A DNA stretch of 63,326 bases, counting the filler, from Octopus bimaculoides (taxonomy: Eukaryota), in assembly GCF_001194135.2 (NCBI RefSeq). It is 2 parts of 2 records of this genome, joined end to end, with 100 filler letters (N's around TTAATTAATTAA, not from the genome) between each part and the next. Parts side by side here need not be neighbours in the genome. Positions count along the whole stretch, not along the records: positions 32,048 to 63,326 come from NC_069004.1; 1 more part is not named here. One strand, written 5' to 3'. Below, in pieces: positions 37,885 through 62,583 of the stretch (position 1 is the first letter of the stretch; the number at the start of each line of letters is the position of its first letter). The notes beneath the pieces are model-generated. The model was not told where the DNA came from. It made no database searches and saw nothing but the letters and a program-made list of their open reading frames with translations. Position numbers and translations under genes: made by a program.

Positions 37885-38335
37885 ACCTTATTCATGTTGT
37901 AGGTTTTTACAAAATCAAAATATATCAGATCCACTTCTAGCTGATTCGTAAGTTGTTTCAACACCCCATCATGATGCTGCAGGAGCTGTGTAAAACAGTT
38001 TCTTTCTGAGCAGAAGCTATGCTGGATATCAAAAAGCAAGGCATTATCGTCTTGGAACATGCTCTGTTTTCTTTTGATAATTCATTCCATGACTTTGCTG
38101 ATATGCATGGTTTGTGAGTCAGGTCTACAATTTTTAGCATCTTCTCTGCTTCCTCCTTTATAAATCGGACACATTATGCCTTCCTTTAACTTTGTGGCAA
38201 GTCTACCACTTGCAAGGAAGCTTTGGGAAAGGATCTGCAGTAATCTTCATAGGGCCCTTTAGGCATTTCTTTAGAATTGAACACAGAATCATGTCATTGC
38301 AAGACACACCTGGAAGGTTGCTCATTTATTCATTC
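37885..38335 (-). mobile_element. CR1/L2-group LINE reverse transcriptase fragment, decayed
   Basis: KEGIMCPIYKGGSREDAKNCRP...ISKVME; QHSF...RNCFTQLLQHHD...VDLIYFDFVKTY (canonical QHGFR..RSCLTQLL...VDVIYLDF.KAFD). Confidence 0.85.
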
Positions 38336-43915: not shown

Positions 43916-45187
43916 AAAACAAAACTGGGTATCTACTTTAACACCAGTCCACATTAGACCACCATGTCTGCTCCCTGGGTGGCACTGGATTTTGGTCATC
44001 TAGAGTTTTGTGTGTGAAATCTAGTAGATGGTAAATGGTGATACCACTCTTGCTTTTGAGTGGTCTTTGTTAAAAGTACTTAACAAAGCACTTCTGTGCC
44101 TTTAATAGAATTCCAGTCTGTGGACAAATTCTTCACAATGGTCTTGAGAAGTCCCTAAGACACCATTTCTGTTTTTTGGGTAGTCTCTGTTAAAGGTACT
44201 CAACATGGCACCGATGTTGCAGGCCCAAAGGCACTATTTTTGTATTTTGAATGATGGTTTATGTTTAAGAACCCCAACATGGCACTTGTGTATAGAGTTC
44301 CAGTCTGTAGCCGATTTCTTCCTGCAATTCTTGGAGGCATTAGAAAAATAAAAGTTCATATGTAGCATTTTCCTTCCTCTTTTTAGCTAAGCCATAAAAA
44401 TAAAATAAAATAAAAAAAAAAATCAGACCGCTTTTCCTTCAATGGGGGCCCCCACATCCAGCCGACAGTAGCTTCCTCTGTTAGATAAAAATATTAAAAC
44501 CCCCCCCAAAAAATTCCAACTAAATGCAACAGTAGTTAAACCTCCCTCAACAAGTCCCTTCTTATCTTCATTAATAGTGACACCACAAGATCCCAACAAT
44601 GGAATCTCTGTTGAACAAATAAACCATCTCAATGAAACAGCCAGTAGGGTGGTGAAGGGGTGGACTGTGTTTTGGATTTAAAGAACTTCTTGACCTTATC
44701 TTTAATCCACATGGTACCACCCTGTCTTTGGCAGTGGTATCTTTGGTATAAAAACCCACCCTACTTTTGTAGTTTTATGTGAGAACTCTCTTCTGCTCCA
44801 TAAACAACTTACATTCTACAGAATGCTCGTTTAATGCACCAATTAAGAAATATGTCTTTTAATTAGCGTTAATTACTCTTTGGATGGTGCAGCAAAAGAA
44901 GATGATAGCAGAAGTACCAGGCTTTTACTGGGGGTGAATCAGTCGACTAAAACCCTTCAAAGCAGTGTTCCAGTCCGAAGAGATGCATTCATGTATTCTT
45001 TTACTCTTTTGTTTGTTTCTGTCATTTGACTGCGGCCATGCTGGAGCACTACCTTTAGTTGAGCAAATCGCCGCCCTGAATGTACTTATGATAAATAATA
45101 GACGTCATTGTTCATAGGTCTGCTTTGTCAGGGGCCAACCTTGGGCTAAACCACCACCACCACCACCACTACTACGCTCTTATTGGT

Positions 45188-45530
45188 TCATTAACAGATG
45201 GCGCTGGCAGTAACACTATCTTTCTGTCTGTTGTAGGACTGCCAGAGTAAGAGAGCCAGCAGCAGTAACTCTATCCTTTTCCTGTTGCTGTGCTTGACTG
45301 ACAGGGGTCGCCACTGGTTTAAACCTTGCCTCTCCTTCTCAGTCTTGACAGCTGGGTGTTGAAAGCAGCACTTTCATCTCTTTAGTCACTCACAGAGGGC
45401 GCTTACTGACAACTCACAACTCAACTTCCCTCCAATTTTTTTTTCTTTTTTTCCCCCATTTTTTTTTTATGTTACTAACTGGGTGTTAACAGCATTGTCT
45501 CTCCTTCTTCTCCAACAGAGGGCGCTACCA
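45188..45530 (+). promoter_or_regulatory. Cluster of four co-oriented CTCF-like motifs (candidate insulator or boundary element)
   Basis: ttaacagatggcgc (45191), ctgacaggggtcgc (45298), ctcacagagggcgc (45389), ccaacagagggcgc (45512), compared with the bilaterian CTCF core CCASYAGRKGGCRS. Confidence 0.55.
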
Positions 45531-45689
45531 GCAACACTTTCTCTTTATTCCTTGACACAAGGAGATTATAGTTGAACTCTCAAATAATGGCATGTGTATT
45601 GTATTGTAACCTTAACAGCCATCTCTAAATTAACACAATGTGTGTGTTTTGTTTGTGTGTGTGTGTGTGCATGTGTGTTTAATTCAATG

Positions 45690-45905
45690 TATGTTTTATC
45701 TTGTACTTGTCTCAGTCATTAGACTGCGGCCATGCTGGGGCACAGCCTTGAATTTTTAGTTGAATGAATCGATGCCAGTACTTATTTTTTAACCCCCCCC
45801 CAGTACTTATTCTATCAGTCTCTCTTTTGCTGAACTGCTAAGTTACAGGGATGCAAACCCACCAACACCTATTGTCAAGCAGTGCTGGGGAATAAACACA
45901 GACAC
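45690..45905 (-). mobile_element. SINE family A 3' half
   Basis: ctgcggccatgctggggcac...ttgtcaagcagtg. Confidence 0.8.
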
Positions 45906-46049
45906 AAAGATACACATGTAGATACACACACACATGCATATATATTAAAAATGAGGAAGGAAGGTCAGTTTATAGGATTACCTTAGGTTTCCTGTCCATA
46001 AAGGGTTTAGCTCCTGAACAGAACAGCAGTTCGTTGCAGAGTTACACCC

Positions 46050-50085: not shown

Positions 50086-50673
50086 TAGATATAGTTTACT
50101 TTTCCATTAAGGTAAGGTCAACAAAGAAAGTACTCCATCTGGTGGGAGAAACAAATATTATTTAATACACACAGTTTTTGGGTATGTACCACTTATAGTT
50201 TCATATTCTGAAGATTTATCAAAGTAGGTTTTGGGACACTCCTGGGGTCTTCAAGTAATGTCCAGGCTCCACACCCATGATCCGTAATGGGAAACAGCTT
50301 TTGGTTTGGATGTGTGGATCTAAAAAATTTGACTCGTGTTCTAGTTATGTAATTTTTGTCAATATTATTCTGTTTCATAGTTTTGTTATTGCTGAGAGCT
50401 CGTAGAAATGAGACCAAAAAAAAGAACAATCTTAATATAAATATGATGTTATGTGTGTATATATTTATGTGTGTGTGTATATATATATGCACAAAATGAT
50501 GATGAATCATTTGTCATGTTTCCTAGTCTCTCCGATGCTGTCCATTAGCGGTGTCATTGTCCTCCCCTCCCTCTTTGGTCTTAAGTACCGACAGTCAAAG
50601 ACTTAATGCTTTCTCCGGTTTACCAAAAAATTATCTGACTCAATGAAATGACAACATTTTCGCTGCTACTTAC

Positions 50674-52071: not shown

Positions 52072-53079
52072 TATGAGGTCTGATCAAAAAGTACCTGTAT
52101 TGGTGCTATAAAGAGCAAACCACAACACACATCAACTTGGCATTTAATTTCCTTCAAAGTAATCTTTTGAAGCCACACATTTTATTCAGCATCATTTCCA
52201 TTGGTGGAAGCATCCTTGGAACTCTTGTTTTTGGATTGCAGGCACCTGCCTCATCACATTCTCTTGGACTTCCTCGAACATCTTGAAATCTTGTAGTAAA
52301 GATTGTTTGCCAACATAACATGGCAGTCCCGGTCTAAGACGAATGTTGCTGTAATTTAGCCCCAGGAGACATCGTCTCCAGCTGGCTATATGACACGATC
52401 TGTGTCCTTATATTTTCGAACCAGGGAATCTAGCACTCCTCACTCAGCTCAAAACAATATCTGTGTAACCCAGAAATCGCGATACACAGATATTGTTTTG
52501 AGCTGAGTGGGGGTGCTAGATTCCCTTGTTTGAAAATATAAGGACACAGATCGTGTCGTATAGCCAGCTGGAGACGATGTCTCCTGGGGCTAAATTACAG
52601 CAACATTCATCCTAAACCAGGACTGCCATGTTATATTGGCAAACAATCTTTACTACAAATTACTGTTGCTGAATATCTCACGCTATGAGATTTAAAAATA
52701 CTAATTTTCTTATCTTGAAATCTTGTGTGTGTGTCTTCCACTATGAAGACTGAGCCTTAGTTTTGGGGTCATAGCCACAGACCCATGATTTGTCACCTGT
52801 TATGACTGTTTCCCAAAAGTTTTTGTCTCCCTCGAAACAATCAAAAAGATCCTACACGGCTGAAGCCCGATCTTTTCAAGATGACCACACTCTACATACT
52901 TCACAGCCAAGCACTGTTATAAACAACAGAAGTGAGAGAGAACATTGTAACTTGGTGAGCATGTGCGACAGAGTTTAAGCTCCGAGTTCAAGGTCAGTCT
53001 GTGCCAGAGGTCTTCACTCTGTGTACTTCAGCTCTGTTATCACAGCAAGAGTCCTGAAACTTTATGGTCGGACCAAATA
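52072..53079 (-). mobile_element. Non-autonomous mariner (internal deletion) interrupted by a foldback insertion
   Basis: TA-bounded TIRs matching 16/21; minus strand VITGDKSWVCGYDPKTKAQSS joined to RFQDVEEVQENV...FHQW...DYFEGN*. Confidence 0.85.
52280..52726. mobile_element. Foldback insertion: about 177-bp inverted arms, 15-nt loop, 53-bp tail, 15-bp TSD
   Basis: Arms 52291-52467 and 52483-52658; atcttgaaatcttgt at 52280-52294 and 52712-52726; the host mariner rejoins when the insert is removed. Confidence 0.85.
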
Positions 53080-58314: not shown

Positions 58315-58683
58315 CTCTCTCTGTCTTTCTCTCTTTATCTTTATCTCTGCATTTTTTTTTTCTTTTCAAAGGGGGTTGTGGGTTGAGGCAGTTTTCTTCC
58401 TTTTCTTTTTTTTTTTTTCCATTTTATGCATAAAAAATGCTTGAATAGCTCAAAATGTCCAGTCCACTCCATCAAATCAACATCATTGGTCTCTCATTTC
58501 CATCATCATCATCACCATCAGTATCAGCATTACCATCATTATTGTAAACATCCCCACCGCCATAAGCATCATCATCATCATCAACTCTGCTCTCCTCATC
58601 ATCATCACCCATCATCATCATCACCACTATTCTCATCGTCATCACCATCACCACTGTTCTCATGTTACCCTTCCTCCTCCCCC

Positions 58684-58719
<36 letters not shown>

Positions 58720-58939
58720 GTGTCAACCGCAATAACATGAAGGCGGGGAAGGAGAGGATCAGAAGCAGAAGGAGGGGGGGGAAAGGAAGAAAGACCCCAA
58801 TACAAAAAAAAACAAGAGAGAGATGATGTTGGCATGGCAACCAGAGGGAGGAAGTGATGGTGAGAGGAAAGGGAGGAGGAGGGGAAGTAGTGGTTTTGGG
58901 GTGAGGGTGTTTGTGAGTGGGGGATGGAAAACAGATGGT

Positions 58940-59305
58940 GTGGGTGGAGACTTAGGCATGTGCTTTGATTTGTGTGTGTGAATGTTGTATGATTTGTGTG
59001 TATGTGTGTGTATACACTGATGTGTGTATGTGCTTGGTGTGTATGGTATGGTATGTGTGTGTGTGTGTATACAGTGTGTGTCCCCAATGTGTATGTATGT
59101 TATGGTGTCTATGTATGTGTGTATGGTGTATGTATGATGTACAAATATGTGTGTATAAGGTATGTATATTGTGTATATGTATGTGTATGGTATGTGTGTA
59201 TGATTGTGTGCGTATGGTGCATATGTAAGATGTATACGTATGTATGTATAAGGTATGTATGTTGTGTGTGTGTATGGTATGTGCATATATGGTATGTGTG
59301 TAACT
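58940..59305. repeat. Degenerate (TG)n/(TATG)n tract
   Basis: Direct reading. Confidence 0.9.
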
Positions 59306-59549
59306 ATAATAGGCCATACCAGTAATTATAACTGACATTTCCATGACACATCAGTCTACTTGCGAAAATTGGTCCATTGGTGGGGGTAAAGCTGGTGGTG
59401 GTGGTGGTGGTGATTAATGTTGTTCAACCCCTGGTCAATCCTGTTTTAACAGACCTAACATGATCAAAGGCATTCCATATGTGCCCGTCCTCTGATAAAG
59501 CTATATCTAAGACCACAATAGCTACCATGCCCATTTTTTTTTTAAAGGG

Positions 59550-59960
59550 AGGCACGGCTAAGTGGTTATGAACCTTGCTTTGCAACTGCCTGGCTTTGAG
59601 TTCAGTCCCACTCTGTGGCACCATGGGTGTCTTCTGCTGAAGTCCTTGGCTGAATTTGAACTCAGAACCTGGAGACAGATGAAATACTGCTAAGCATTTT
59701 GCCCAGCGTGCTAATGATTCTGCCAGCTCGTTTGGTTGATGTCGATAGATTGATGTCAGGGTCTTTCTCATTGTTCCCATCTCTCACTGTATGATAGCTG
59801 GTGTTAGTTTGTTTACAACCCTGTGACTTAGCCATTCAACAAAAGAGATTGATAGAATAAGTACCAGACTTGAAAAAAAAATACCGGGGTTAATTTGTTA
59901 GACTAAAACCCTTAAAGGTTGTGCCCCAGTATGGCCACTGTCAAATGGCTGAAACAAGTC
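59550..59960. mobile_element. SINE A (+) halves with a nested SINE B fragment (-, about 59642-59730)
   Basis: Family motifs. Confidence 0.65.
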
Positions 59961-60319
59961 ACGACAAATGGTATAATTCGAGGGAGACTCAGCTGCTGTT
60001 TCTAGTTAGTCAAGCAAACAGTGGTACTTATTTTACCAACAGTAGTGATGTTATTGTTCTTCTTGTTGTTGATCTAGCAGACCTCCAATCAGTAAGATTC
60101 CTGCCATGACCATCTCACTGATTTACATCTGTCAGAGACTAGCGACCATATTTGTTTTATCGATTGAGTCCTTTACTTTTGAAGGCAATCAGGTTGTTAT
60201 TTGAAGGAGAATTCAAGACTTAGCTGTTGTTTCTTGCAAACCAGACAACCATTTAGAAGTTCTGGGTTACTTGACAATCTCTGCATCTGTTTTAGCTTAT
60301 GACTGTTTACTCTTTGAGT

Positions 60320-60449
60320 GTGGTTAGTCTTGCTGTTGTGTGTGTGTGTGTGTGTGTGTAGGTATGTGCTACAAATATTTGTGTCTATCTATCTATCCAT
60401 TCATCCGTCCATCCCTCTCTTTCTCTCTCTGTCTCTCTCTCTCTCTCTG

Positions 60450-60484
<35 letters not shown>

Positions 60485-61662
60485 GCCTATCTATCTATCC
60501 ATCTAGCCACCTCTCTCTCTCTCACTTTCTATCTATCTATCTATTTTCTATATATATATACATGCACATATGTATTTAAATATATATGTGCACATATATG
60601 TATATGTAGACACGAGTGTGTGTGTGTGTGTATGTATGTATATATATATAAAATATATTTTATGTGCGTGTGCATATGTTAGTATGTATATATATATATA
60701 TATATATATATACGATGGGTGTAGACACGAATACCTACCTATATATATATATATATATATATTCCATGTATATTTAAACACACCCATGTCCTTTTAAACA
60801 TGCTTAAAATACATATGAATATAAGTATGTTTAAATGCATAATATGATGTGTATATGAGTAGTATAAAATATATATACACACACATGCATATAATTTCTG
60901 GAACCTCGTTTCATACATACCATGTCACTTCTACTACACACACACACACACATGTAAGTGTAAACACACATACACCTACCCATATACACTCACTTGATGC
61001 TGGTGGTGGATAATTGTGGGTAATATTGATTAACAAATTCTGGCTTAATTATTTGATAATTTAGAGTATTTTTGGTGGTGATGGGTGGTGGTTGTGGTGA
61101 GGTGTATATATGTGGTGATGTGTGTATATATGTGTTCATATATGCGTGCATGTGTTTTTGTGTATGCGTATACTTGTGTGTGTGTGTGTGTGTGTGTGTT
61201 TGTTTGTGTGTGTTTTGTGTGTGTTTGTGTTCATATGCATGTGTTTGTGTGTGTATATGGGCATGTATACAACTGTCTATATGCATGTATGTGTATATAT
61301 ATATATACATATGTGTGTGTGTGTACTTCTGTATATGGGCATGCATACATCTGTGTATATATGTGTGTGTATAAATATGTATATATATGTGTGTGTGTGT
61401 GTGTGTGCTTGTGCTTCTATATATATGTGTGTGTCTGTGTTCACATATACATGTGTGTGTGTGTGTGTGTTTGTGTATACATGTGCATTTGTTGTGTGAT
61501 TGTGTGTACCTCTGTATATGGGCATGTATACATCTGTCTGTGTGTTTGCATATGTATATGTGCTTGTGTGTGTGTCTGTGTCTGTGTGTATGTGGTAGAA
61601 GAAGCTGAGTGTGGGCAGTAAGTATTTTTGTTCCAAGGGTGGATGATGGCTTTCTGGTGCGA

Positions 61663-61696
<34 letters not shown>

Positions 61697-61816
61697 GTGT
61701 GTGTGTGTGAGGGGTAGGTGTGATTTGGGTGGATGGAGGGGCAATCTATGTTTGTGTGTGTGTGTGTGTGAGAGGGGTGTAGGTGTATATGTGTTTGGGT
61801 GAGAGAAAGTGTGACT

Positions 61817-61854
<38 letters not shown>

Positions 61855-61930
61855 AAAATCTGACCCTGTATGTGTGTGCGTGTGTGTACATGTGAGAGAA
61901 AGTCAAACTCTGTGTGTGTGTGTGTGTGGG
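60320..61930. repeat. Long compound degenerate microsatellite region (TG, CT, TA, GAT)
   Basis: Direct reading; source of many spurious ORFs. Confidence 0.9.
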
Positions 61931-62583
61931 ATGATGGGCAGGGGTGGTTGTAGAGGGGGGTATCATTGGATGGTATGTTGTGAGAAGGGGTCTCCACTGA
62001 TGGATGGCTGGTGTTCCTGGGTGGTAGTAGTGGGGGGTGGAGGGAAACTGTAGTCACTCCCCGTCATACCCTGACCCTACCNNNNNNNNNNNNNNNNNNN
62101 NNNNNNNNNNNNNNNNNNNNNNNNNNNNNNNNNNNNNNNNNNNNNNNNNNNNNNNNNNNNNNNNNNNNNNNNNNNNNNNNNNNNNNNNNNNNNNNNNNNN
62201 NNNNNNNNNNNNNNNNNNNNNNNNNNNNNNNNNNNNNNNNNNNNNNNNNNNNNNNNNNNNNNNNNNNNNNNNNNNNNNNNNNNNNNNNNNNNNNNNNNNN
62301 NNNNNNNNNNNNNNNNNNNNNNNNNNNNNNNNNNNNNNNNNNNNNNNNNNNNNNNNNNNNNNNNNNNNNNNNNNNNNNNNNNNNNNNNNNNNNNNNNNNN
62401 NNNNNNNNNNNNNNNNNNNNNNNNNNNNNNNNNNNNNNNNNNNNNNNNNNNNNNNNNNNNNNNNNNNNNNNNNNNNNNNNNNNNNNNNNNNNNNNNNNNN
62501 NNNNNNNNNNNNNNNNNNNNNNNNNNNNNNNNNNNNNNNNNNNNNNNNNNNNNNNNNNNNNNNNNNNNNNNNNNNNNNNNNNN

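What the first reader, a model, noticed from the sequence alone, without database searches (positions are those of the whole stretch)
45188..45530. Four co-oriented CTCF-like motifs that carry every CpG in the segment: candidate cephalopod insulator array
Seen: ACAGATGGCGC, ACAGGGGTCGC, ACAGAGGGCGC and ACAGAGGGCGC start at about 45194, 45301, 45392 and 45515, all on the + strand and 91-123 bp apart. The last (ccaacagagggcgc) differs from the CTCF core CCASYAGRKGGCRS at one position. Flanks share decayed repeat blocks (agtaacactatc / agtaactctatc / agcaacactttc; ctgggtgtt twice). From 45181 to 45540 I count exactly four CpGs, each at the same motif position, inside a domain where SINE CpGs have mostly decayed. 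Established: CTCF and its core motif are conserved across bilaterians, and bound sites tend to be protected from methylation. Inference: an old tandem duplication created a homotypic CTCF (or other C2H2 zinc-finger) site array whose CpGs were kept by binding or selection. All four sites have A rather than C/G at motif position 4, which could be a lineage-specific preference.
Basis: partly seen in the sequence, partly recalled or inferred. Interest (0 to 1): 0.72.

Follow-up and report, generated by a model that had tools for sequence, protein, structure and literature searches.

The report
Decayed repeat carrying CTCF-like motifs
Four same-strand copies of an 11-base GC-rich motif, holding the only CpGs in about 550 bases, do sit in an eroded local duplication between two SINE copies. 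Only one copy is a good CTCF site, and nothing available here shows it works as an insulator.

Summary
ACAG[AG][GT]G[GT]CGC occurs four times in the 31-kb piece, at 45194, 45301, 45392 and 45515. All four are on the + strand within 332 nt, and they hold the only four CpGs between 45176 and 45726.

- **Duplication origin:** weakly supported. A second block (CAGYAACACTWTCT) recurs, sites 3 and 4 share an upstream flank, and k-mer sharing exceeds shuffles. Tandem Repeats Finder sees no array, and most flanks cannot be aligned.
- **CTCF likeness:** only site 4 (CCAACAGAGGGCGC, 45512-45525) is a near-consensus CTCF core. The other three lack the 5' CCA triplet, and all four carry a disfavoured A at core position 4.
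- **CpG content:** the segment is not CpG-rich (o/e 0.23; piece 0.33).
- **CpG retention:** keeping all four CpGs is unusual (about 0.01 or less) under a decay rate calibrated on local SINE copies. That figure is post hoc and model-dependent.
- **Untestable here:** no octopod DNA was within reach of the tools. Copy number, cross-species conservation, methylation, accessibility, occupancy and insulation could not be checked.

Most likely this is a relic tandem duplication with one chance or residual CTCF-type site. A selected zinc-finger binding array remains possible. Interest is modest.

The parts
45181..45572 (+). Whole eroded array: four intact motif copies, recurrent B blocks, pyrimidine-rich spacers and possibly decayed extra units
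   Evidence: There is no other copy in the 31-kb piece. Tandem Repeats Finder reports no array.
45194..45204 (+). Site 1, ACAGATGGCGC (CpG at 45202), followed directly by a B block. The preceding triplet is TTA, not CCA.
   Evidence: PWM score 5.8 bits, p 1.3e-4.
45301..45311 (+). Site 2, ACAGGGGTCGC (CpG at 45309). The preceding triplet is CTG, and T replaces G at core position 11.
   Evidence: PWM score 8.8 bits, p 4e-5.
45392..45402 (+). Site 3, ACAGAGGGCGC (CpG at 45400). The preceding triplet is CTC.
   Evidence: PWM score 4.4 bits, p 2.2e-4. Its upstream flank is homologous to that of site 4.
45509..45527 (+). Site 4, TCTCCAACAGAGGGCGCTA (core CCAACAGAGGGCGC at 45512-45525, CpG at 45523). 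This is the only near-consensus CTCF-type site.
   Evidence: one mismatch to CCASYAGRKGGCRS; 20.6 bits, p 7e-8, best in the piece; one base from a validated human CTCF core.
45208..45221 (+). B block copy 1, CAGTAACACTATCT, directly after site 1
45263..45276 (+). B block copy 2, CAGTAACTCTATCC, 38 nt (start to start) before site 2
   Evidence: 2 mismatches; expected about 0.007 by chance in the array
45363..45376 (+). B block copy 3 (weak), AAGCAGCACTTTCA, 29 nt (start to start) before site 3
   Evidence: 3 mismatches, chance level on its own
45529..45542 (+). B block copy 4, CAGCAACACTTTCT, directly after site 4
45352..45360 (+). CTGGGTGTT block, first copy. It starts the segment shared upstream of sites 3 and 4.
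   Evidence: (D7)
45479..45487 (+). CTGGGTGTT block, second copy
   Evidence: (D7)
45555..45566 (+). Possible decayed fifth motif, ACACAAGGAGAT. It has 4 mismatches to ACAGAGGGCGCT, no CpG, and sits 26 nt (start to start) after a B block.
   Evidence: (D1, 72% over 29 nt). Not recovered at 3 mismatches or fewer, so support is weak.
45436..45468 (+). T-rich slippage-prone tract that lengthens the spacer between sites 3 and 4
44990..45157 (+). Upstream flanking SINE copy. The alignment reaches 45128 and the envelope 45157. It runs into the (ACC)n at 45150-45169.
45684..45930 (+). Downstream flanking SINE copy, preceded by (TG)n at 45639-45678

Best explanation
The segment is the eroded remnant of a local tandem duplication in non-coding, CpG-poor DNA between two SINE insertions. 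The unit was either a monomer of about 45-55 nt (B block, pyrimidine-rich spacer, then the GC-rich 12-mer ACAGAGGGCGCT) or a period of about 100-120 nt made of two such monomers. Slippage and small indels in the pyrimidine- and T-rich spacers, together with substitutions, erased most unit homology. The compositionally complex 12-mer and the B block stayed recognisable (inferred). The 12-mer happens to equal the 3' two-thirds of the bilaterian CTCF core. In one copy (site 4) a CCA triplet completes a near-consensus site. If cephalopod CTCF reads DNA as vertebrate CTCF does, site 4 could be bound, with zinc fingers 3-7 on the core (inferred from known CTCF biology). The array as a whole is not shown to be a CTCF array or an insulator.
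For: - The motif cluster is real and beyond chance.
- There are traces of duplication beyond the motif. The B block has three copies with 2 mismatches or fewer inside 330 nt, against one elsewhere in the piece. The flank shared by sites 3 and 4 gives p=0.002, and the downstream flank shared in register by sites 1 and 4 gives p=0.045. K-mer sharing outside the motif gives p about 0.02. A monomer consensus of about 48 nt is recoverable.
- The spacers are 60-90% pyrimidine and include a T-run tract, which fits fast indel erosion.
- The segment is single-copy within 31 kb.
- No coding, RNA-family or tRNA signal is present.
- Only one of the four sites is a good CTCF core.
- The segment's CpG o/e is 0.23, so it is not an island.
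- At flank identities of 66-72%, a well-kept 11-nt window somewhere in the unit is common in neutral simulation (0.77-0.98).
Against: - Survival of the CpG in all four copies is unlikely under the local SINE-calibrated CpG decay rate. SINE CpGs are retained at 21-28%. In simulation, P(all four kept) is about 0.01 at 72% flank identity and about 0 at 66%.
- CpG depletion is general in the piece, not specific to SINEs.
- Most flank pairs show no homology at all. If that reflects substitution rather than indels, the 12-mer is far better kept than neutrality predicts: P(any such window) is 0.02-0.17 at 48-56% identity.
- The kept block matching YAGRKGGCRSY is a specific coincidence.
Confidence: 0.5

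Rival explanations
1. A selected homotypic array of binding sites for a sequence-specific zinc-finger protein. This could be CTCF with a lineage-specific tolerance at core positions 1-4, or another C2H2 factor that reads ACAGRGGGCGCT. Occupancy or purifying selection would keep the motif and its CpG, and the array might act as a boundary, tethering or regulatory element.
For: - The four copies keep 40 of 44 motif cells while most flanks are unalignable.
- All four CpGs are retained against a local CpG retention of about 21-28% in SINEs.
- Two of the three substitutions fall at the R and K positions of the CTCF core with allowed bases (hand count on the sequence; p about 0.12, not significant).
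- Site 4 is one base from a validated human CTCF core and is the top PWM hit.
- CTCF-like motifs are reported at cephalopod TAD boundaries and loop anchors (PMC9023564; PMC13652810). The vertebrate-type CTCF motif is the most abundant motif in annelid open chromatin (PMC7854359).
Against: - Three of the four sites lack the CCA triplet, and all four have a disfavoured A at core position 4.
- No functional data of any kind is available.
- The statistics are post hoc, on a feature chosen because it looked like this.
- The segment has no accessibility-type signature in its sequence: CpG o/e is 0.23.
- In the annelid, active CTCF motifs are mostly single and in promoters, not arrays.
- Octopus intergenic CpGs are largely unmethylated in soma, so binding is not needed for a CpG to survive.
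Confidence: 0.27
2. A fragment of an unrecognised transposable element whose internal or subterminal short repeats carry the motif. Such repeats could be binding sites for the element's own proteins or promoter monomers. The motif copies would then be inherited from a family consensus rather than kept locally.
For: - The locus is embedded in repeat-rich DNA between SINE copies.
- Co-oriented short motifs at irregular spacing are typical of subterminal or promoter repeats (general knowledge).
- A weak inverted pair, 45186-45202 with 45618-45634, could be read as terminal repeats (I2).
Against: - No second copy of any part of the array exists in the 31-kb piece, intact or CpG-decayed.
- The inverted pair is at chance level (about 1.6 such pairs expected per kb by my estimate), and no target-site duplication is evident.
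- There is no significant similarity to the local SINE family.
- No transposon protein was found nearby.
Confidence: 0.18
3. A set of alternative 3' splice acceptors (pyrimidine tract followed by ACAG) for non-coding or very short exons.
For: Each motif begins with ACAG after a window that is 65-90% pyrimidine.
Against: - The whole + strand of the array is 60% pyrimidine, so the tracts reflect composition.
- Every frame downstream hits stops or low-complexity peptides.
- No gene, exon or protein match exists anywhere in the piece.
- The conservation lies downstream of the AG, in GGGCGCT, not in the tract.
Confidence: 0.02

Closest known systems
Vertebrate CTCF core sites, e.g. human CCAGCAGAGGGCGC and TCAGTAGAGGGCGC, which bind CTCF in vivo and in EMSA (PMC6101590); consensus CCASYAGRKGGCRS (PMC6746451)
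   Same: Site 4 (CCAACAGAGGGCGC) differs from CCAGCAGAGGGCGC by one base. All four sites share the 3' part of the core, and three of them match YAGRKGGCGC exactly.
   Different: Position 4 is A in all four sites. Sites 1-3 lack the CCA triplet. Binding has not been tested, and no cephalopod CTCF matrix exists.
Tandem-repeat-borne CTCF site arrays, such as the DXZ4 macrosatellite (PMC3491370) and the repeat-derived CTCF sites of the Igf2/H19 imprinting control region (cited in PMC6746451)
   Same: Co-oriented CTCF-type motifs are supplied by duplication of a repeat unit.
   Different: Those units are hundreds to thousands of bases long, clearly homologous, and shown to be bound. Here the period is about 50-120 nt, homology is almost erased, only one site is strong, and the H19-type methylation-sensitive CpGs lie in the 5' half of the core rather than in GGCGC.
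CTCF-like motifs enriched at Euprymna scolopes TAD boundaries and at coleoid loop anchors (PMC9023564, PMC13652810)
   Same: The same presumed clade and the same kind of sequence-only inference.
   Different: Those are statistical enrichments over 100-kb boundary regions or loop anchors. No individual site, array or occupancy has been described, and this locus could not be placed relative to any boundary.
Transposon-borne CTCF motif expansions such as mammalian SINE B2 (Schmidt et al. 2012, listed in the references of PMC12221973; details recalled from memory)
   Same: Repeats act as carriers of CTCF motifs.
   Different: The motif here is not part of the local SINE family, and no dispersed copies were seen.
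Ordinary decayed minisatellite or local tandem duplication
   Same: Irregular period, recurrent short blocks, slippage-prone spacers, non-coding context.
   Different: One block, which contains the only CpG, is kept much better than the rest.
INSM1-type C2H2 motif TGTCAGGGGGCG (recalled from memory, not checked)
   Same: Site 2 (TGACAGGGGTCG) matches 10 of 12 positions. This shows that other zinc-finger motifs share the CAGGGGGCG core.
   Different: Sites 1, 3 and 4 fit less well. It is a lead only.

Membership tests
CTCF binding site (core CCASYAGRKGGCRS) | Match to the full 14-nt core including the 5' CCA triplet: site 4 | tested here: met
   45512-45525 has one mismatch, at position 4. PWM score 20.6 bits, p 7e-8 (matrix from memory).
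CTCF binding site (core CCASYAGRKGGCRS) | Match to the full 14-nt core including the 5' CCA triplet: sites 1, 2 and 3 | tested here: not met
   They have 3, 4 and 3 mismatches, counted by hand on the sequence, and none is recovered at one mismatch or fewer. PWM p values run from 4e-5 to 2.2e-4.
CTCF binding site (core CCASYAGRKGGCRS) | Occupancy by CTCF (ChIP, CUT&Tag, footprint or EMSA) | not testable with these tools
Chromatin insulator or domain boundary | Insulation minimum or loop anchor in Hi-C or Micro-C, or enhancer-blocking activity | not testable with these tools
   The genomic position of the piece is unknown, and no contact maps are available.
Chromatin insulator or domain boundary | Conservation restricted to the motifs in orthologous loci | not testable with these tools
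   The DNA scans gave only single matches. The metagenome and viral hits have unrelated flanks, and the SINE string found nothing in prokaryote genomes. The protein-based route found nothing.
Tandem repeat (minisatellite) | Head-to-tail units that are homologous along their length | tested here: inconclusive
   Tandem Repeats Finder finds none at score 30 or above. Four of six flank pairs are at chance on both sides. Against that, the B block recurs, the site 3-4 flank gives p=0.002, and k-mer sharing gives p about 0.02.
Dispersed repeat family or transposable element | Further copies elsewhere | tested here: not met
   There is no other copy in 31 kb, intact or CpG-decayed. Genome-wide copy number is not testable here.
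Local SINE family | Significant alignment to the SINE model or consensus | tested here: not met
   The nhmmer envelope of the upstream copy ends at 45157. The SINE head and 3' end aligned against the four sites give p 0.23-0.97.
CpG island or hypomethylated island | Raised CpG o/e and G+C relative to the surroundings | tested here: not met
   CpG o/e is 0.23 against 0.33 for the piece, and G+C is 45%.
Known structured RNA (Rfam) or tRNA | Match at the gathering score | tested here: not met
   Only sub-threshold snoRNA-like hits appear (21 and 20 bits against gathering scores of 42 and 65).

The most novel reading that the evidence does not exclude
The 12-mer ACAGRGGGCGCT is the recognition site of a cephalopod architectural or zinc-finger protein. 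This could be CTCF with relaxed 5' requirements, or a lineage-specific C2H2 factor from the expanded octopus repertoire. On this reading the four co-oriented copies form a selected, CpG-protected boundary or tethering element built from a tandem duplication. It would be the first individually defined insulator-type element in a mollusc.
Probability: 0.12. Interest if true: 0.6.

Novelty: new member of a known kind. Interest (0 to 1): 0.3.

Why it matters
Direct evidence for how invertebrate genomes other than those of flies build chromatin boundaries is lacking. For cephalopods only motif enrichments have been reported. If the array were bound and insulating, it would give a concrete, mutable element for testing CTCF-dependent insulation in a spiralian, and for asking whether tandem duplication supplies such sites. 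As it stands, it is a candidate locus and cheap to check against existing octopus Micro-C, ATAC and bisulfite data. On sequence evidence alone it is most likely an ordinary eroded duplication.

Tried and rejected
1. **Array derived from the flanking SINE.** By eye the 3' end and head of the SINE resembled the motif plus B block. Alignment against shuffles gave p 0.23-0.97, so this was rejected.
2. **MITE with terminal inverted repeats** (45186-45202 paired with 45618-45634, I2). The pair is at chance level and no target-site duplication is visible. Not supported.
3. **CTGGGTGTT blocks and 45244/45555 as decayed motif copies, giving an alternating dimeric higher-order repeat.** This is suggestive in alignments A1 and A2, but none is recovered at 3 mismatches or fewer. 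Left as an idea.
4. **Coding exon, RNA gene or tRNA.** Nothing found.
5. **Fetching related DNA.**
   - Exact-ORF look-ups of two window ORFs found nothing.
   - A chimeric six-frame protein query gave no hit at E 0.001 or below.
   - The motif-plus-B-block pattern gave one hit in the metagenome collection and one in the viral collection, both with unrelated flanks.
   - The SINE pattern gave nothing in prokaryote genomes.
   - The SINE string is in no paper.
   - As a result the taxon was not confirmed with tools. It looks octopod from the SINE, which I recall from memory.
6. **Splice-acceptor reading.** Rejected on composition and the lack of exon signal.

Full report
**Observation**

- ACAGATGGCGC, ACAGGGGTCGC, ACAGAGGGCGC and ACAGAGGGCGC start at 45194, 45301, 45392 and 45515 on the + strand.
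- They are the only matches to ACAG[AG][GT]G[GT]CGC on either strand of the piece 32048-63326.
- Allowing the CpG to have decayed (ACAGRKGKYRC) adds no match. The expectation is 0.40, and 0 of 100 shuffles reach four.
- The core-like 10-mer YAGRKGGCGC occurs three times, against 0.05 expected.
- The CpGs between 45176 and 45726 number exactly four, one in each motif.
- The quoted flank blocks are present.

The cluster is far beyond chance.

**Context**

The piece is draft-quality, non-coding, microsatellite-rich DNA with many N gaps.
- No ORF has Pfam support.
- No Rfam family or tRNA is found.
- A SINE family is present in 11 copies.
- One SINE copy ends just upstream of the array: the alignment reaches 45128 and the envelope 45157, running into the (ACC)n at 45150-45169.
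- Another SINE copy starts at 45684, after a (TG)n tract.
- CpG is depleted throughout the piece: o/e 0.33 overall, 0.34 with SINEs and microsatellites masked, 0.37 in the SINEs.
- The array's own CpG o/e is 0.23, so it is not an island.

I could not confirm the organism with tools. The SINE looks octopod to me, but that is from memory.

**Origin of the four copies**

Tandem Repeats Finder reports no array. With the motif excluded, 50-nt flanks are at chance for most pairs. Two pairs are exceptions:
- the upstream flanks of sites 3 and 4 (p=0.002);
- the downstream flanks of sites 1 and 4, marginally and in the same register (p=0.045).

A second block, CAGYAACACTWTCT, occurs at 45208 and 45529 directly after sites 1 and 4. 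It occurs again at 45263 with 2 mismatches and weakly at 45363, each 29-38 nt (start to start) before sites 2 and 3. Only one comparable match lies elsewhere in the piece.

K-mer sharing outside the motif is modestly above shuffles (p about 0.02). A monomer consensus of about 48 nt (B block, pyrimidine-rich spacer, 12-mer) can be drawn.

I conclude that the copies descend from a local duplication that is now almost erased. The spacers are pyrimidine- and T-rich and prone to slippage. That could explain the loss of alignability without much substitution; this step is inferred.

No other copy of the unit exists in the 31 kb. It is not related to the SINE.

**Is it a CTCF array?**

- Only 45512-45525 (CCAACAGAGGGCGC) matches CCASYAGRKGGCRS with one mismatch or fewer. 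The consensus is as cited in PMC6746451.
- One such match in the window is not significant on its own: 14 of 100 shuffles give at least one.
This is a lead rather than a curated test. Sites 2, 1 and 3 reach only p 4e-5, 1.3e-4 and 2.2e-4.
- Site 4 is one base from CCAGCAGAGGGCGC, a human site bound by CTCF in vivo and in EMSA (PMC6101590).
- The block conserved among the four copies runs from core position 4 to about position 15. It begins with an A that is disfavoured in the matrix. It also omits the CCA triplet, which is among the most informative core positions.
- The shape of the conservation therefore does not follow CTCF's information profile. That argues against CTCF as the constraining agent at sites 1-3. 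It does not argue against some other factor.

**CpG retention**

Across the 11 SINE copies, inferred ancestral CpGs survive in 19 of 89 cells (21%; about 28% for the six clearest sites). Identity at other positions is 81%.

I ran a star-tree simulation with that calibration:

| Flank pairwise identity | P(all four CpGs kept) | P(some 11-nt window kept at 40/44 or better) |
|---|---|---|
| 80% | 0.045 | 1.00 |
| 72% | 0.010 | 0.98 |
| 66% | about 0 | 0.77 |
| 56% | about 0 | 0.17 |
| 48% | about 0 | 0.02 |

The motif's general conservation is therefore not remarkable if the erosion is mostly by indels. The fourfold CpG survival is unusual.

Several caveats apply:
- the test is post hoc, on a feature picked for this property;
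- the true tree and the age of the duplication are unknown;
- if two to four decayed units are counted, the binomial probability rises to about 0.03-0.11 (my arithmetic);
- somatic octopus methylomes show under 10% of CpGs methylated, concentrated in gene bodies and nearly absent from intergenic DNA and transposons (PMC9476566), so the local methylation history is uncertain.

**Literature frame**

- CTCF-like motifs are enriched at E. scolopes TAD boundaries (PMC9023564).
- They are also detected at loop anchors in three coleoids (PMC13652810).
- Direct evidence for loop extrusion in invertebrates is lacking (PMC10658181; PMC12221973).
[quoted passage not shown] It occurs mostly as single promoter motifs without directional arrangement (PMC7854359).
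- Tandem-repeat-borne CTCF arrays are known in mammals, for example DXZ4 (PMC3491370).

A cephalopod CTCF-type site is therefore a known kind of candidate. An individually validated one would be new.

**Verdict**

| Reading | Probability |
|---|---|
| Relic tandem duplication whose best-kept block resembles the 3' part of the CTCF core, with one near-consensus site that may or may not be bound | about 0.5 |
| Selected zinc-finger or CTCF binding array | about 0.27, of which a true insulator about 0.12 |
| Transposon fragment | about 0.18 |
| Splice acceptors | about 0.02 |

The discriminating data are copy number, orthologous alignment, methylation, accessibility, occupancy and insulation. All lie outside the reach of the tools here. 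Every attempt to fetch related DNA failed.

Noticed in passing
window 52291-52658: Large near-perfect inverted repeat: outer arms of 149 nt at 94% complementarity, inner arms of 30 nt at 97%, and a 15-nt loop. It is a foldback or hairpin-type element or an inverted duplication. I spotted it because the CTCF matrix hit the same 19-mer on both strands (52561 + and 52370 -).
   Followed up: partly
window 44867-44980 (-) and 44990-45157 (+): Two copies of the local SINE family lie head to head immediately upstream of the array. The family has 11 copies in the 31-kb piece, and most of its inferred CpG sites have decayed to TpG or CpA.
   Followed up: yes
window 37719-38060 (-): A 113-aa ORF with a decayed reverse-transcriptase-like stretch (…SERNCFTQLL…DLIYFDFVKTY…). 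It has no Pfam support and no database hit, so it is probably an old LINE fragment.
   Followed up: partly
window 58835-58853 (+) and 50130-50148 (-): The next-best CTCF-matrix hits in the piece are TGGCAACCAGAGGGAGGAA (p 1.6e-6) and CTCCCACCAGATGGAGTAC (p 7e-6). Both lack the GCGC end and are near the chance level for 31 kb.
   Followed up: no
window 45602-45634: TATTGTAACCTTAACAGCCATCTC resembles the sequence leading into site 1 (TATTGGTTCATTAACAGATGGCGC). The heptamer AGATGGC is replaced by its reverse complement GCCATCT, which looks like a micro-inversion of a fifth copy. Statistically it is at chance level.
   Followed up: partly
window 58400-62050: A long CA/TG- and CAC-rich microsatellite domain that gives spurious His- and Cys-rich ORFs. 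GC skew is extreme (0.68 at 61048-62047), and the domain is interrupted by an N gap.
   Followed up: no
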